Source of the DNA: Thalia democratica
Lineage: Eukaryota
Length of the DNA stretch: 64,000 nucleotides
Assembly: GCA_965202585.1 (NCBI GenBank)
Contig: OZ241829.1
Span: 84,010,001-84,074,000, forward strand
Direction: 5' to 3'
The position numbers and the translations under genes are program-made. The notes under the pieces are model-generated. The model was not told where the DNA came from and did no database searches. It saw only the letters and a program-made list of their open reading frames with translations. Of this stretch, positions 5,586 to 36,525 are shown in pieces; the first letter of the stretch is position 1; each line of letters opens with the position of its first letter.

Positions 5586-6257
5586 GGGTGGGTTTCAATT
5601 TAGCACGAGCGTCACTTTTGCACGAGCGTCATTTTTTCTAGAAGGGACACTTTTGCACGGCGTCACTTTTGTACGAGTGGACAATTTTACACGGCAACTC
5701 TTTTGCACGAGCGTCACTTTAGCACGATGGGTCACTTTTGTACGAGTGGACAATTTTGCACGGAAACTTTTTTGCACAAGCGTCACTCTAGCACGAGGGG
5801 ACACTTTTGATCGAAAACATTTTTTCACAGGTTGAAATTTTTTTTCTGTCACTACCACCCCTTACCCTCGGTCGGTAAATTTTTAATTTCTTTTTTTTAA
5901 TTTTACATACTTTTTTAATTTTCCTTTTTTTCGGGTTTACTTAATTTTATTAGGTATATATTTTTTGTTTTCTATCACTGTTTCCCGAACCCTTATCCAC
6001 AGTTGGTAACATTTTGTTTTCTTTTTTCATTTTATATTAGTTTTTTTTTTCTAGTTTTTATGCTATTTTATTTATTTTATCATTTTCATTTTTACTTTCA
6101 CTGTTACCACTAACCATTACCATCGGTCGGTAATTTATTTTTATTCATTAATCTTGTTATTTTTTTTTCCTTGCTATTTTACAATTTATTTTTCTTTTTA
6201 TCTTATATATTTTTTACTCTGGTGAAAAATTTTGTCGTGCAAAAGTGACCTGTTCCC
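5586..6257. mobile_element. MITE with GGG..CCC ends and arrays of ~17 bp GCACGAG repeats (possibly PIF/Harbinger-like)
   Basis: Starts GGGTGGGTTTCAATTTAGCACGAG and ends GTCGTGCAAAAGTGACCTGTTCCC (imperfect TIR). AAT on both flanks (3 bp TSD); ~12 tandem ttttgcacgagcgtcac-type units at 5600-5810; internal cttaccctcggtcggtaa motifs. Confidence 0.7.
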
Positions 6258-21264: not shown

Positions 21265-22136
21265 TGTAACGCCTCTGGCTATAAATTAAATTCAGCAAAA
21301 GAGTTTTCTCTAATTAGGGGTTTTTTGTATTAATTTGTTAACTTTCTAAATTGCCGCCTGAGATTTAAATTATTAGATTTGTGGCAGCACAAGCTGAACT
21401 TCCTATGTGCTAAATTGTGAGTATTGTTATTAATCTCTTATTTTTTAGTTCTATCTCTTAAATTGTAATTTCTAATAAAGTTAAATTGAAGTTAATTTTA
21501 CTGTGGTTTGCATAAATTTGAATAAATAAACTCTGCTGTTGATAAAATTAAATTGAAGTTAATTGTACTTTTGGTTTGCATAAATTTGAATAAATAAACT
21601 CTGCTGTTGATAAAATTAAATTGAAGTTAATTGTACTTTTGGTTTTGCATAAATTTAAATAAATAAACTTTGGTGTTAATACTTCATTATATTGAAATTA
21701 TTTGTAATTTGATTTTACATAAATTTAAATAAATAACCTTTGGTGTTAATAGTTAATTATATTGAAATTATCTGTAATTTGGTTACATAAAATTGAATAA
21801 ATAAGCTTTGTTGTGGATAATTAATTAAGAAGCAAGCTGCTTTTGGTGCTTTTAATAATCTCTGAAATTTACAAATCAACTTTAACCAATTTAAAATAAA
21901 CTAGTGGGCCACACCTAACTCTTGGTATAGCATAATGAGTAATAGATCCAAGCCCCCCAAAAAGGATGGGGTCAAGCCCCCCTACATCATACTTTAGACA
22001 AGGTCAACAACCCCGAAACTCGCTGTAGCCAACGTAACATTGACAGAGGGATCAACAAAAGGGGTGTTGACCCACACTCTTCGCGCCGTAGCCAACCTGG
22101 TCCATCAGACCAACCACAAGCAACGTGCGAAAGATA
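21265..22136 (+). mobile_element. Second solo LTR-like insertion (872 bp) with internal tandem repeats
   Basis: Unit E resumes after it; GTAT duplicated (21261-21264 and 22137-22140). Begins TGTAAC and ends GATA (one change from ACA); ~67 bp tandem units at 21483, 21550 and 21618 plus related units to ~21810. Confidence 0.6.
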
Positions 22137-22963: not shown

Positions 22964-24166
22964 TTAATATCCAGTTCTAGGTTTTGGTATAAGTCAGGGT
23001 TGACTCATGCTAGTTAAAACTATTCTTAAAAGTACAATCTGATTGGGGATGCTTTTTTGCAAAACTTAAGCAGTTTAAAGCATTATATAGTTGCATTTTT
23101 GTATGCTTTAAAGACTAATATTTAAAAATAAGTGTCTTTTTTAATTTAATTTATCTTTATAAATTTCAACTTTTGAACTTCTCTTGTTTTTTTACTAATA
23201 ACTTAAGATGACCAAAGATAGTTTAACGTATGTTATGCTGAGAATAAGTGAGGTCAGAAAAATCTTTTGAAAATCTAAGATAGCTTAGTGTAATTAGGCT
23301 ATTAAACTAGTTTGAAATTTAAAAAACTCCTTATAATTCAGGCAAGTTTAAGTTTTTTTTTTAACTCAGCATACTTTTAAAATTTTTATAAAATCTTTAT
23401 ACAGTGTAATTCTAAATCTCGAATCACATTTTTTATTTTAGTTTCGACATTCTGATATTTCAAAGCCAACTATGTTTAAATTCTGATTTAAAAACATTAT
23501 TCAAATTTACTATACATATTATTTATTTAAGACTTTTTTAAAGGATTAAAACTCAGGTTGACTTAGGACAATTTAAAGTCATTTAAGGTGGTTATGTTTT
23601 ACTAAAACAGTAGTAACATTCTTATATTTGTTATTAGTAACTCAGACTGATTTTATTTTAGTTTTAAGAAAGGCTTACCTAAAAATTATAAATTTTATAA
23701 AAAAATTATTGATTCTTTTTAATTTAACTTTTAAATTTAAAGAATATCAATTATTACGCTATTTAGATTTTAAAGGTTTCAATTTAAAAATTTTTGTCTA
23801 AAGATTTATAATATAAAAGTTCAAAAATATTTTTTAGTATGGTGTTTTTTTTTTCATAACCAAATGTGTTAAAAAAATGTATTTATTTATTTTCAAAAAT
23901 GTTTTTTTTTTTTAAATTTGGTTAGTTTAAGATCATTTATATTGTTATTTTGATTCAAATAAATTGAAACAGTGTTTTTATGAATATAAAGAGTTAAGTT
24001 TTTTTTTATGTATATAAATACTTTGTTTCATAACTAATTGAGAATTTTATATTTAAACAAATAATCATTTGTTATAGACTAACAAACTTTGTTTTTACTT
24101 TGTATACTTGATCAACAAGCACACTGATAAAAATACTATTACAGACACTTAAGTAATTAAATAAAA

Positions 24167-24913
24167 ATGTCCACTGATATGAAAATGACATCTGATAGCG
24201 AACTATCATATTTCGATGATTCGGACACTTACTCATCAGACTCTAGCTGCGACGAACCAACAACTAAAGTTGCGGACCAGTTTAAAAATCAATGCTTGGT
24301 GGGAGACAAGATTTGCTTCAAGTGCAAGCAGCCGTTTCACTACCCCCTGGAGTGCGCGATGATGAAAGACTGGATGTATAAATGCCAGCAAGAGAGCGAA
24401 GAAGAAAGCGACTCCGACATGAAAAGCGATGAAAAATCTGAAGATAAAGATCAATTCGCGAAGTACTATGACGTGTACGAAAAGCATGAAGAAAGCATTG
24501 CGGAAGAAGGTAAAGTCTCAATGGAAGACATATATGATAGATTCGAAAATCCCAAAGTTGCTGCTGAAGACAAAGATGAGGACGAAGAGATGGAAGTAGA
24601 TGAGATCGCGAAAAGACCGGCTGACTTCATGGAGCGATTGTTTTTGAAAAAGGCCTGCAAAGTTTTGAGAGAGTCTCGCTACTGTCTGATGCAATCCTGC
24701 ATATACGCCTACAATATCACTGATGAAACTCAAAAGATTAGTTTTAAAATAATTACCGATTACTTGCAGATCTCTGTTGAAAAGATCAGTGAGTTTTTGG
24801 AAAACGACGTCCACAAGTTGTCTGATGAAAAGATAAGTAGGGAGATGAATGGAGCTGTTGACTTTTGTGAAAACCGTCGCAAAGCCATCATTGAGTATAT
24901 CAAAGAAAATTAA
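24167..24913 (+). CDS. Intronless Ariadne (ARIH1-like RBR)-derived protein: acidic N-terminus, C-terminal half of the IBR and Ariadne domain; no RING1 or RING2
   Basis: 248 aa open frame. [30 protein letters not shown] aligns with ARIH1 [55 protein letters not shown] with [36 protein letters not shown] with RYCESRRRVLL (ARIH1 sequence from memory). GC about 40% versus <20% in flanks; AAAAATG start context. Confidence 0.85.
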   Translation: [248 protein letters not shown]

Positions 24914-24980
24914 TTTTGCAAGTTATAGACAATTTACAGCAATCGTTTAGTGCTTTTCAAAGTCATTGATTTTAGTGCTG

Positions 24981-24986
24981 AATAAA
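24981..24986 (+). terminator. Candidate polyadenylation signal of the Ariadne-derived gene
   Basis: AATAAA 68 bp after the stop codon; weak evidence in AT-rich DNA. Confidence 0.35.
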
Positions 24987-25461
24987 CTAGTATATTTTAA
25001 TTTGCTTAGTATTAAATATCATTTAAATTTTAACTAAAAAAAAGAAAATACTTTACACTAAAGTTATAAGATTAATAAAAGTAAAACTTAATTTATTCAT
25101 AGTTTCGAATTCCAAATAACTATAATGATATTAATTAGATAAAAATTTATATAACCAAATATTGTTATTATTAAACACTGCCCTTCCAAAAAGTAACAAT
25201 CCTTTTCTTCGAAAAATTCAAAATCGCGCTGAATAGTACAAAGGATGAAATACCTAAAATTGTAGTGGAATATATTTCTATATTTTTAAAACTATAATTA
25301 ATAAAGCTTAAACTTTATAAAATTTAAATCAAACTTACTAAAAATAAAGGAAATAAGTTATAATAATTTTTATAGCTATCTAAAATTGTTTTACAATACA
25401 ATATAATGCTTTTAAACTATATCATGGTAAAATAAAAAAATAGTTGTTTTAGTGTTTAAAC

Positions 25462-25593
25462 GGGAACGGGTCTAAATTGCGCGAAGACAAAATTGCACGA
25501 GGTTACTAAATTGCACGTGGGGACTAAATTGCACGAGAACAAAATTGCACGAGTGTACAAAATTGCACGAAGACTAGTTTGCACGCAGGCACG
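25462..25593. mobile_element. Truncated left end of the GCACGAG-repeat MITE family
   Basis: GGGAACGGGTC terminus matches the TIR at 6257; seven aaattgcacga repeats follow; no right end. Confidence 0.6.
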
Positions 25594-26659
25594 TAGTAGA
25601 AAACAAGTCCTAAAATTCTTATTCATTTTAAACACACAGAAGTTACCTGAAATTTTCCACCACTACTATAACAACAAAATGTATGCATAATAAATTGTAC
25701 TCACCAGTTTTTTACTTTTCCTTCAAAATTTTTGAGTTTTTATAATAAAAAAACATTTAAAAGCCATTACACAATTTCAAAAAGTAAAATTCAAAACTTA
25801 AGTCATTTTGTCTTTGCTTCATACTGGTCGCTTTATATATTCCTAAATATAGTTATTGATGTTAAGTTAGATTAGGTTTGAGTGACATTTAAAAAATAAA
25901 TTTTGATTAAAAGTATTCTGAAACCAAAAATGTGAGTATCACTTAAAATGTTAGATCTTTTCACATCTGTAAAAGTAAAATCTGTTGAAAAAATCAATAT
26001 TTATTCTTTAACTACCTCTTTCTTTGTCAAAATCTTACTGAAGAAAGTATGTAACAAAATTTAGCTTAGTTGAAGAAAGTTTTCCATCATTTACTTCTAT
26101 ATTAGGCCACGTTCAAAAAGTTTTTTACGTCATTTGCTAGGTTATGTTATTTAAACTCTTATTGTCTAAGATTGAGTGTGTATTCAATCCTGGGTCACTA
26201 GCTGTGTTTTTTTTTTTTTGACTTTTGATATAATTTTTTTTTTACATTTCTTAACGATAATGGATCTATCCTTATCCTTTGGAAGTTTTAATTCTGTTCT
26301 CCTTTATGGGAAATGAGCTCTCTTCAATTCTTAACAAATAATTGCTGTTACTAATCTGTTATAGTTTTTGTCTACCATGTGTTTTAAGCTATAACATATG
26401 ATTTTTATCAAATTACATTTTTCAGGTTGAACAGCAAGTTTAATGAATTCTTGGACAAAACCTTTTACGGGCTTTTTTAAAGAACCATTATTTGTAGAAT
26501 ATTCTACACATGTCACTCTTTAAGTGGTAGGCGACAACATAGTTTTTACTTATGTAGCCCCTTTTTTGTAGTTGTTATTAAAATGAAAAGTGTTTTTCCT
26601 TCCTTTTTACGGATTCCTTGTTAATTTTTGGCATTTCACTAAGTTGTTAGTTAAAAAAC

Positions 26660-28399: not shown

Positions 28400-28860
28400 T
28401 TTAGCTAAAAAGCAAATTCTATGCAGAGCAGGCCACAACTGGTATCATCTTGTTGAAGTTAATTTCATAAAAAACACAAAAAAAAAAGTGTAAACTTGAA
28501 CAATTGGGTGTATGAGATGCCATCATTAGTACCTCATCCAAGGTACTCAACGTCAGAATTCTTGAAACCTTGCAAATTTTGCCTGCACCTGACATGTATT
28601 CCATCATTGCCACTATCAAATACCCATGTGCTTTTATGTTTGAGTTCTCTTGCATTAGGATCCGTGCGATTATGTACTTTTGCAAACCAGCTCTCAATAT
28701 TTTTTCTAAGCTGTTTGCAGAATTTCTCATTTAATTTTTAATGTACAGAACTTTATTGTGTTTTTCAAACATAATAAATATCAAATGTTTCTGCCCGTTT
28801 ACAAATCTGTCTAAATTCTTGTTATATACCGAAATTAACCAGTTTTTATCTTCTTTAGGG
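28400..28860 (-). pseudogene. Ulp1/C48 protease pseudogene, the longest copy
   Basis: NWLI...LDRFVNGQKHLI...KHNKVLYI, KFCKQLRKNIESWFAKVHNRTDP...KSTWVFD, then QQDDTSCGLLCIEFA; stops and frameshifts present. Confidence 0.75.
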
Positions 28861-36043: not shown

Positions 36044-36525
36044 ACTCAGAGTTCAATGTTTTCTGTTTTCTAGACTTCCAAACCTCTTCAATAGATAAAG
36101 TTACGTCATATTCTAGTCTCTTTGTCAATGAAGATTTTCAAGCTTGTTTTCAATTACATGACTTTCGTAATAATATCTAGTATATAATATCTATGATACC
36201 ATATATCACTTTTTGTTTGAACCACTCAGAGTTCAATGTTTTCTGTATTCTAGACTTCTAAACCTTCAATAGATAAAGTTACGTTGTATCCTGGTCTATT
36301 TGTCAATGAAGACTTTCAAGCTTGTTTTCAATTACATGACTTTCGTAATAATATCTAGTATATAATATCTATGATACCGTATATCACTTTTTGTTTGAAC
36401 CACTCAGAGTTCAATGTTTTCTGTATTCTAGACTTCCAAACTTCTTCAATAGAAAAAATTTCGCAGTATTCTGGTCTCTTTGTCAATGAAGACTTTTGAA
36501 ACTTGTTTTTAATTTCATGACTTTT
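36044..36525. repeat. 2.7 tandem copies of a 178-180 bp unit
   Basis: actcagagttcaatgttttctg at 36044, 36224 and 36402; the minus strand reads as a decayed peptide (EEVWKSRIQKTLNSEWFKQKVIYGIIDII). Confidence 0.9.

What the first reader, a model, noticed from the sequence alone, without database searches (positions are those of the whole stretch)
24167..24913. Intact Ariadne-domain-only gene: an RBR ligase stripped of both RINGs (candidate decoy or inhibitor)
Seen: a clean 248-codon intronless frame in otherwise decayed DNA. It runs acidic N-terminus, IBR second zinc site (CFKC..H..C), then a short acidic spacer ([17 protein letters not shown]) exactly where the catalytic RING2 (CPKC..IEK..GCNHM..C) should be, then the full Ariadne helical domain. 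Established: in ARIH1/HHARI the Ariadne domain masks the RING2 active site, and neddylated cullin-RING ligases relieve this by engaging that domain. Inference: two large in-frame losses (RING1 and RING2) with no stops suggest selection. The product cannot be a ligase but could compete for neddylated CRLs or inhibit ARIH-type RING2 in trans. I know of no described Ariadne-only protein class, though I cannot exclude one.
Basis: partly seen in the sequence, partly recalled or inferred. Interest (0 to 1): 0.78.

Follow-up and report, generated by a model that had tools for sequence, protein, structure and literature searches.

The report
RING-less Ariadne ligase relative, intact gene
This is an intact copy of a fast-evolving gene family in a planktonic sea-squirt relative: it descends from Ariadne-type ubiquitin ligases, has lost every catalytic part and can only bind partners, and what it binds is untested.

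Summary
Window 24167-24913 (+) is a 248-codon open frame, the only recognisable gene in 64 kb. It encodes an acidic, serine-rich N-terminus, the second zinc site of the IBR (C50-x2-C53-x4-H58-x4-C63), a 20-residue acidic spacer where RING2 should be, and a complete Ariadne helical domain. The model aligns to human ARIH1 at Z 15.6, rmsd 2.2 A.

It is not a one-off. The scan already found the same family at other places in this genome (s1-301169, s1-291891, s1-301233, s1-311354). I found eight more loci in marine metagenomes: two intact with the same architecture and six broken.

The RING-less proteins form one clade (100/99), nested among intronless full-length Ariadne ligases of the same lineage. 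Selection is weakly purifying (omega about 0.5, below 1 at p about 1e-5). The 150 bases upstream are better conserved than the coding sequence.

The residues that latch the Ariadne domain onto RING2 are replaced in every RING-less member but kept in full-length kin. This argues against trans-inhibition of RING2. Binding to cullin-RBX as a competitor remains the best guess but is untested, and no RNA data exist. I rate it a new variant of a known kind, of moderate interest.

The parts
24002..24166 (+). Conserved 5' flank (putative promoter, outron and 5' UTR) shared by family members
   Evidence: Identity of the window to L001 is 71-80% over -1..-150. It falls to 57-66% by -250 and to chance level beyond. 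blastn similarity to L008 starts at 24002. This flank is more conserved than the CDS, which is 67% identical to L001.
24139..24144 (+). Acceptor-like TTACAG, 22 nt before the ATG (candidate spliced-leader trans-splice site; not tested)
Evidence: The same motif lies at -22 to -26 in L001, L004 and L005, and at -35 (TTTACAG) in the full-length paralogue L003.
24158..24160 (+). In-frame TAA between the acceptor-like site and the ATG
   Evidence: It excludes an N-terminal extension read through this acceptor. L004 has the same stop at -9.
24167..24286 (+). Residues 1-40: acidic, Ser/Thr-rich N-terminus, homologous to the N-terminus of full-length Ariadne ligases
   Evidence: 10 D/E and 14 S/T in 40 residues. 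It aligns to the N-terminal acidic stretch of P0005 and P0011. AF2 pLDDT is 40-51, so it is predicted disordered.
24287..24391 (+). Residues 41-75: IBR remnant, i.e. the second zinc site (C50, C53, H58, C63; nt 24314-24355) plus the helix that follows the IBR
   Evidence: Pfam IBR 25.2 bits. phmmer aligns it to ARIH1 294-334. All four ligands are kept in the intact members. pLDDT is 84-94 for residues 51-80.
24392..24451 (+). Residues 76-95: acidic spacer in the place of RING2/Rcat
   Evidence: The alignment to P0005, P0006, P0011 and P0014 shows the whole Rcat missing. It has 11 D/E in 20 residues. Length varies between members, and omega is not distinguishable from 1.
24452..24910 (+). Residues 96-248: Ariadne domain (switch helix plus helical bundle)
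   Evidence: phmmer to ARIH1, E 2e-12. AF2 pLDDT is mostly 90-98. In Foldseek the top 14 hits are all ARIH1, ARIH2 or CUL9. VIA-align to 7b5s_H gives Z 15.6, rmsd 2.2 A, 169 residues, model 46-248 to ARIH1 300-546.
24911..24913 (+). Stop codon, at the homologous position in all members that reach it
24914..25041 (+). Conserved 3' UTR with AATAAA at 24981-24986, ending at an A-run (25036-25043)
   Evidence: The 3' flanks of L004, L006 and L001 align through the AATAAA and about 30 nt beyond. blastn similarity to L006, L007, L008 and L009 ends at 25012-25041.

Best explanation
Shown: the ORF is an intact member of a multi-copy, lineage-specific gene family of a planktonic tunicate. The family arose once from an intronless Ariadne-type RBR ubiquitin ligase by loss of the UBA-like domain, RING1, the first IBR zinc site, RING2/Rcat and the C-terminal tail. 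The product (29 kDa, pI 4.5) cannot bind an E2 through RING1 or carry ubiquitin on a catalytic cysteine, so it is a pseudo-ligase. It keeps a disordered acidic N-terminus, one zinc knuckle and a well-folded Ariadne domain. Its frame and its 5' and 3' flanks are kept by weak purifying selection, while sister copies die (birth-and-death evolution). Inferred (about 35-40% likely): it acts as a non-catalytic binder of cullin-RBX complexes. In human ARIH1/ARIH2 the acidic N-terminus and the Ariadne domain engage the cullin and the RBX1 RING. With no Rcat to fold back on, the Ariadne domain would be permanently 'open'. It could then occupy the RBX1/cullin surface and compete with full-length Ariadne ligases and RING-dependent E2s, damping or redirecting CRL ubiquitylation. 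The former Rcat pocket has been re-lined with polar residues (E113, C178, K194, T197), which makes the domain stable on its own.
For: Fold: AF2 pLDDT 81, pTM 0.73; Foldseek top 14 hits are ARIH1, ARIH2 or CUL9; VIA-align Z 15.5-15.6 to CRL-bound ARIH1 (7b5s, 7b5l) against 12.8-13.7 to autoinhibited ARIH1 (4kbl, 4kc9). Family: P0001 (243 aa) and P0073 (246 aa) are intact with the same architecture, and six other loci are broken. Paralogous contigs at 80-95% identity occur in the source organism, with up to 7-8 contigs carrying alternative letters at one site. The listed coding-region indels sum to multiples of 3, whereas flank indels do not. Single origin: the RING-less clade has support 100/99 and sits inside a 100/100 clade with the full-length P0005/P0006 group. 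P0005 has RING1, IBR, RING2 and Ariadne domains by Pfam and is uninterrupted on its contig. Selection: omega is 0.576 for the family and 0.49 for the intact trio; 2dlnL is 18.8-18.9, p about 1.4e-5 against omega = 1. The chance of no stop is 0.3% or less at d >= 0.2. The 5' flank is 71-80% identical against 67% for the CDS. CRL logic from papers. The acidic N-terminus is required for cullin binding in cells (PMC3817463). The Ariadne domain binds CUL1-RBX1 on the same RBX1 RING surface as the E2 UBE2D, and an 'opened' ARIH1 blocks UBE2D and UBE2R2 reactions (PMC7904520). The position of the CUL1-contact residue W452 is an invariant aromatic (F154) in the family.
Against: There is no expression evidence: no RNA run holds the locus. 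The UBA-like domain that binds NEDD8 is lost. The position of the RBX1-contact residue D497 (severe when mutated in ARIH1) is Y, P or C in the family and already H or Y in the lineage's full-length ligases. N486 and I489/I490 are not kept either. Omega of about 0.5 is high for a protein with a conserved partner. Six of nine known loci are dead. Pfam's Ariadne model (PF19422) does not reach threshold on this protein.
Confidence: 0.45

Rival explanations
1. It is a trans-acting inhibitor of the catalytic RING2/Rcat of full-length Ariadne ligases. The free Ariadne domain would clamp onto their Rcat as the cis domain does in autoinhibited ARIH1.
For: An excess of isolated human Ariadne domain partly blocks Ariadne-deleted HHARI in vitro (PMC3817463). 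The equivalents of E431 and E503 are mostly kept (E114, E205). Full-length paralogues that could be targets exist in the same lineage.
Against: That trans-inhibition needed F430/E431/E503. In all RING-less members F430 is Glu, Y476 is Cys, E492 is mostly Lys, Q495 is Thr, Ala or Met, and R420 is Val or Glu. Full-length relatives, including the closest ones, keep a hydrophobic residue at 430, Tyr at 476 and Gln at 495. The model fits the open, CRL-bound conformation better than the latched one.
Confidence: 0.1
2. It has no function. The family spreads by duplication or retroposition and its copies decay; the window copy simply has not been hit yet.
For: Six of nine loci are broken: L002, L005 and L006 by frameshifts, L008 by two nonsense codons, and L007 and L009 by 5' truncation plus a frameshift. 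Omega is about 0.5. There are no RNA data. The surroundings are gene-poor and rich in repeats.
Against: Three copies that differ at 20-34% of coding nucleotides keep the same start, stop and frame. Simulated neutral change leaves an open frame in 0.3% or fewer of cases at d >= 0.2, before counting indels. Omega is below 1 at p about 1e-5, also in the intact trio alone. Zinc ligands, E113, C173, C178 and many core residues are invariant. The 5' flank is more conserved than the CDS. GC3 of 0.49 in a 27% GC background has not decayed.
Confidence: 0.2
3. It has a new function unrelated to cullins. The re-lined former Rcat pocket (invariant E113 and C178, plus C173) and the zinc knuckle would bind a new partner, possibly in a genetic conflict (virus, transposon or germline), which would explain the fast evolution and copy turnover.
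For: The replaced latch residues are not merely relaxed: they are fixed to new invariant residues across divergent members. Omega is high and the family shows birth-and-death turnover. CRL-contact residues of human ARIH1 are poorly kept.
Against: Polar replacement of an exposed hydrophobic pocket is expected for simple solubility after loss of Rcat and needs no new ligand. No partner is known. There are too few sequences to test for positive selection at sites.
Confidence: 0.25

Closest known systems
ARIH1/HHARI and ARIH2/TRIAD1 (Ariadne subfamily of RBR E3 ligases)
   Same: It shares the acidic N-terminus, the IBR second zinc site and following helix, and the Ariadne domain. The fold match to ARIH1 is Z 15.6 and to ARIH2 Z 15.5. 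phmmer to ARIH1 gives E 2e-12.
   Different: It has no UBA-like domain, no RING1, no first IBR zinc site, no RING2/Rcat with its catalytic Cys, and no C-terminal tail. Latch residues F430, Y476, E492 and Q495 are replaced.
Lineage-specific intronless full-length Ariadne ligases (P0005, P0006 and related environmental proteins)
   Same: These are the closest relatives: a 100/100 clade and 34-39% identity. They share the insert after the switch helix, F at the W452 position and H or Y at the D497 position. The gene is likewise intronless, with an acceptor-like TTTACAG before the ATG.
   Different: They keep RING1, the full IBR, RING2 with the catalytic motif, and the latch residues.
Isolated human Ariadne domain used experimentally (HHARI-ARI; Duda 2013 as cited in PMC3817463)
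   Same: It is a free Ariadne domain without catalytic parts.
   Different: It is a laboratory construct, not a natural gene, and it works through F430/E431/E503, of which F430 is lost here.
Pseudo-enzymes of the ubiquitin system (for example RING-less or inactive TRIM 'pseudoligases')
   Same: It is a catalytically dead descendant of an E3 family kept as a gene.
   Different: The parent family is different. I found no paper describing a RING-less Ariadne protein. ESM Atlas holds ~200-aa clusters annotated with only the Ariadne Pfam domain in plants and chordates, but these may be gene-model fragments.

Membership tests
RBR E3 ubiquitin ligase (Ariadne subfamily) | RING1 that binds the E2~ubiquitin | tested here: not met
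   No RING Pfam hit even at E <= 10. The alignment shows the whole RING1 region of P0005, P0011 and P0014 absent.
RBR E3 ubiquitin ligase (Ariadne subfamily) | Complete IBR with two zinc sites | tested here: not met
   Only profile positions 25-65 of 65 match, at 25.2 bits. Site II (C50, C53, H58, C63) is present, while site I is reduced to one orphan Cys, C43.
RBR E3 ubiquitin ligase (Ariadne subfamily) | RING2/Rcat with catalytic cysteine | tested here: not met
   It is replaced by the 20-residue acidic spacer 76-95. There is no IBR_1 or IBR_2 Pfam hit, unlike all full-length kin.
RBR E3 ubiquitin ligase (Ariadne subfamily) | C-terminal Ariadne domain | tested here: met
   phmmer to ARIH1 437-545. 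AF2 model and fold search: Z 15.6, rmsd 2.2 A, 169 aligned residues. Pfam PF19422 itself does not reach threshold.
RBR E3 ubiquitin ligase (Ariadne subfamily) | UBA-like domain that binds NEDD8 | tested here: not met
   No UBA_ARI1 hit, and the region is absent in the alignment.
RBR E3 ubiquitin ligase (Ariadne subfamily) | Autoinhibitory latch residues of the Ariadne domain (ARIH1 F430, E431, E503, Y476, E492, Q495) | tested here: not met
   E431 and E503 are kept. F430 is E, Y476 is C, E492 is K and Q495 is T, in all or most RING-less members. The residue list is from PMC7904520 Supplementary Table 1 and the mapping.
CRL-binding Ariadne proteins (works like) | CUL1/RBX1 contact residues (ARIH1 W452, D497, N486, I489/I490) | tested here: inconclusive
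   W452 becomes F, an invariant aromatic. D497 becomes Y, P or C. N486 becomes T or Y. I489/I490 are variable. The lineage's own full-length ligases already differ at D497 and N486, so co-evolution with the lineage's RBX or cullin cannot be excluded.
Expressed protein-coding gene | Transcript or peptide evidence | not testable with these tools
   No RNA run holds the stretch. The only holders are two sets of DNA-type contigs from one sample.
Processed retrogene | Poly(A) tail, target-site duplications, 5' end at the mRNA start | tested here: inconclusive
   The unit ends near an A-run at 25036-25043, about 50 nt after the AATAAA, and 5'-truncated copies exist (L007, L009). However, the copies include about 150 nt upstream of the acceptor-like site, and no flanking direct or inverted repeats were found.

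The most novel reading that the evidence does not exclude
The family encodes natural, constitutively 'open' Ariadne-domain caps for cullin-RBX complexes. These would be endogenous competitors that shut out both Ariadne ligases and RING-dependent E2s. They would be kept in several fast-turning-over copies because they take part in a conflict, for example with viruses or mobile elements that hijack CRL-ARIH ubiquitylation. That would be a new class of CRL regulator, built by dismantling an E3.
Probability: 0.15. Interest if true: 0.8.

Novelty: new variant of a known kind. Interest (0 to 1): 0.5.

Why it matters
Ariadne ligases work hand in hand with cullin-RING ligases, which together handle a large share of regulated protein turnover. 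This protein keeps only the parts of an Ariadne ligase that dock on cullin-RBX complexes. It would therefore be a ready-made natural probe, or inhibitor, of that E3-E3 partnership. It also shows how a multi-domain enzyme can be stripped to a regulatory module and still be kept by selection. The family gives a natural experiment on the Ariadne domain: the residues facing RING2 were replaced once RING2 was lost, which independently supports the latch model derived from human ARIH1. If the protein proves unexpressed or partnerless, it is simply a decaying lineage-specific duplicate.

Tried and rejected
- **RNA evidence:** The look-up of sequencing runs found no RNA holder. Read laying could lay only DNA-type contigs of one sample, so neither expression nor trans-splicing could be tested.
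- **Contig joints:** joints that skip 24015/24019 to 25279/25474 rest on 21-25 nt sides in AT-rich repeats at 80% likeness. I did not use them as evidence for an empty site or a mobile unit.
- **JGI metagenome scan with the family profile:** 265 pattern hits, none confirmed.
- **Rfam on the whole window:** nothing.
- **Transposon ends around the gene:** only short AT-rich chance pairs.
- **Other copies in the window:** none by tblastn or blastn.
- **Neighbouring ORFs:** no Pfam family reaches its threshold. One hit, PHA01746-like at 23.4 bits, is sub-threshold and taken as chance.
- **Horizontal or viral origin suggested by the GC contrast:** rejected, because the gene nests inside a clade of the lineage's own Ariadne ligases.
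- **Origin by retroposition of an exon-skipped mRNA:** could not be tested, because the closest full-length relative is itself intronless.
- **Search of earlier findings by sequence:** blank.
- **Site-wise positive selection:** not attempted, because three intact and three partial sequences are too few.

Full report
**1. Observation**

The frame at 24167..24913 (+) is open for 248 codons from an ATG.
- It is the only ORF with recognisable homology in the window. Only three other ORFs reach 110 aa, and none of the ten longest others passes a Pfam threshold.
- From flank composition, about 1e-4 such frames are expected by chance in 64 kb.
- The gene is a GC island: 0.357 against about 0.27 in the flanks, with GC3 of 0.49.

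**2. Anatomy**

- Pfam sees only the last two thirds of an IBR (25.2 bits, residues 27-63) and no RING, RING2-type IBR_1/IBR_2, UBA_ARI1 or Ariadne model.
- phmmer against PDB aligns residues 40-80 to human ARIH1 294-334 and residues 134-247 to ARIH1 437-545.
- An alignment with full-length relatives from the exhaustive search gives the full picture:
  - Residues 1-40 match the acidic N-terminus of full-length Ariadne ligases.
  - The UBA-like domain, RING1 and the first IBR zinc site are missing.
  - Residues 41-75 are the second IBR zinc site (C50-x2-C53-x4-H58-x4-C63) and the helix that follows it.
  - The whole RING2/Rcat is replaced by a 20-residue spacer with 11 acidic residues.
  - Residues 96-248 are the Ariadne domain, starting at its first ('switch') helix and lacking only the last ~12 residues.
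- AlphaFold2 with this alignment gives pLDDT 81 and pTM 0.73. The N-terminus is disordered, and the knuckle, helix and bundle are confident.
- The 14 best Foldseek matches are all ARIH1, ARIH2 or CUL9.
- VIA-align gives Z 15.6, rmsd 2.2 A over 169 residues to the CUL1-RBX1-bound ARIH1 Ariadne domain (7b5s_H). Autoinhibited ARIH1 scores Z 12.8-13.7.

**3. It is a family, and the scan has seen it before**

Earlier notes report RING-less Ariadne genes at other places of this same genome, a planktonic tunicate: s1-301169, s1-301233, s1-291891 and s1-311354. They also report an intronless full-length Ariadne ligase, s1-311457. These were leads; I tested the family claim independently.

Protein searches found relatives only in marine environmental assemblies. 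I read nine loci in all, counting the window.

| Status | Loci | Detail |
|---|---|---|
| Intact, same architecture | window (248 aa), L001/P0001 (243 aa, 48% identical), L004/P0073 (67%) | Same start and stop |
| Frameshifted | L002, L005, L006 | Frameshifts |
| Nonsense | L008 | Two nonsense codons in an otherwise preserved frame |
| Truncated | L007, L009 | 5'-truncated at the same point, plus a frameshift |

Some frameshifts could be errors of 2-3x coverage assemblies. The nonsense codons and the multiple shifts are unlikely to be.

In the source organism's own contigs, many pieces at 80-95% identity lie on the ORF. Up to 7-8 contigs carry alternative letters at one site. The listed coding indels add up to multiples of three (+1, +2 and +3 in one contig; -3 in another), while flank indels do not. 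This is a birth-and-death family.

**4. Origin**

A maximum-likelihood tree of the Ariadne domain puts the six RING-less sequences in one clade (100/99). That clade lies inside a 100/100 clade with full-length ligases known only from the same kind of samples (the P0005, P0006 and P0008 groups).
- P0005 has RING1, IBR, RING2 and Ariadne domains by Pfam. It scores as an ARIH1/ARIH2 relative at 235 and 221 bits.
- P0005 is encoded without interruption on a contig with AT-rich flanks.
- The RING-less form therefore arose once from a lineage-specific intronless Ariadne ligase.
- Because that relative has no introns, I could not test whether the two clean deletions follow old exon borders.

**5. Selection**

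- A codon model gives omega 0.576 for six sequences and 0.49 for the three intact ones. Both are significantly below 1 (2dlnL 18.8 and 18.9, p about 1.4e-5).
- Pairwise estimates range from 0.35 to 0.77 by method.
- The spacer is not distinguishable from neutral. The switch-helix half of the Ariadne domain is the most constrained (omega 0.28).
- Neutral substitution alone would leave the frame open in 0.3% or fewer of trials at 0.2 substitutions per site. The intact copies differ at 20-34% of coding nucleotides.
- The 150 nt upstream of the ATG are 71-80% identical between the window and L001, more than the coding sequence (67%), and similarity vanishes beyond about -250.
- The 3' UTR through the AATAAA is also shared.
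- All members have an acceptor-like TTACAG 22-26 nt before the ATG. In the window and L004 an in-frame TAA lies between it and the ATG, so no upstream exon can extend the protein through that site.

Together this indicates a maintained transcription unit under weak constraint. Expression itself is untested, because no RNA run holds the locus.

**6. Mechanism**

The lost parts are those that bind the E2 (RING1), carry ubiquitin (Rcat) and bind NEDD8 (UBA-like). Ligase activity is therefore excluded on established RBR mechanism.

What is kept overlaps the elements that dock human Ariadne ligases on cullin-RING ligases:
- The acidic N-terminus is required for cullin binding in cells (PMC3817463; see also the preprint 10.1101/2025.02.01.636034).
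- The Ariadne domain clamps CUL1-RBX1 on the same RBX1 RING face that E2s use (PMC7904520).
- In that work an 'opened' ARIH1, but not the autoinhibited protein, blocked UBE2D- and UBE2R2-dependent reactions.
- A protein with no Rcat to fold back on would be permanently open. This agrees with the model fitting CRL-bound ARIH1 best, although that difference in Z is modest.

I mapped the mutational table of PMC7904520 onto the family.

| ARIH1 residue | Role | RING-less clade | Full-length relatives |
|---|---|---|---|
| F430 | Latch on Rcat | Glu in all | Nearly all hydrophobic |
| Y476 | Latch on Rcat | Cys in all | Tyr in all but one (Phe) |
| E492 | Latch on Rcat | Mostly Lys | Mostly Glu |
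| Q495 | Latch on Rcat | Thr, Ala or Met | Nearly all Gln |
| R420 | Latch on Rcat | Val or Glu | Arg in canonical forms; lost (F/L/M) in the closest kin |
| W452 | CUL1 contact | Phe, invariant | Trp, or Phe/Trp in the closest kin |
| D497 | RBX1 contact | Tyr, Pro or Cys | Asp, but His or Tyr in the closest kin |
| N486 | RBX1 contact | Thr or Tyr | Asn, or Thr in the closest kin |

Conclusions from the table:
- The trans-inhibition of RING2 shown for the isolated human domain needed F430/E431/E503, so that model is disfavoured here.
- The CRL-competitor model is not contradicted but is only weakly supported at residue level.
- The new residues E113 and C178 are invariant across divergent members. 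This fits either polar re-lining of a pocket exposed by the loss of Rcat, or a new binding site.

**7. Verdict**

It is one intact copy of a lineage-specific pseudo-ligase family already met elsewhere in this genome.

I give about 0.9 to this descriptive reading. The binding-partner mechanisms share the rest as follows:
- CRL cap or competitor: about 0.35-0.45.
- New partner: 0.25.
- No function: 0.2.
- Rcat trans-inhibitor: 0.1.

I found no paper describing a natural RING-less Ariadne protein. Short 'Ariadne-only' clusters in the ESM Atlas may be fragments. I class it as a new variant of a known kind, of moderate interest pending expression and binding data.

Noticed in passing
window 25468-25603 and 5599-5829: These are short tandem arrays built on a TTGCACGAG-containing unit, with periods of 17-18, 34 and 51-69 nt. 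The first array starts about 550 nt after the gene. Contigs of the source sample pile up on it to a summed depth of about 4e5, against a few hundred on the gene, so it is a very high-copy satellite.
   Followed up: partly
window 36044-36524; 21473-21828: A 178-nt tandem repeat (2.7 copies, 91% matches) and a 68-nt tandem repeat (5.2 copies, 86%).
   Followed up: no
window 26000-64000: AT skew is persistently negative (T over A on the + strand), from about -0.05 to -0.22 across almost 40 kb, unlike the first 25 kb. This could be a long run of one-orientation repeats or a large transcription unit on the minus strand. No Pfam hit was found in its longest ORFs.
   Followed up: partly
window 25379-25458; L007 2153-2229; L009 980-1056: A second 80-nt patch of 73% similarity lies about 310-340 nt downstream of the gene unit in the window and in the two 5'-truncated copies. 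At least some duplications therefore carried more than the 1-kb unit.
   Followed up: no
L003 186-1709: This is the intronless full-length Ariadne ligase (P0005, 507 aa) closest to the RING-less family. It has a TTTACAG 35 nt before its ATG, and its Ariadne domain already lacks the RBX1-contact Asp of ARIH1 (D497 is His).
   Followed up: partly
L008 162-929: This family copy is 61% identical to the window protein over the full length. Its frame is preserved but it has two nonsense codons, one in the acidic spacer and one at the position of E205 (the ARIH1 E503 equivalent). It looks like a recently dead copy.
   Followed up: yes
window 28422-28730 (-): A 103-aa ORF has a sub-threshold Pfam hit to PHA01746-like protein (23.4 bits, cut-off 24.4). 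It is probably chance.
   Followed up: no
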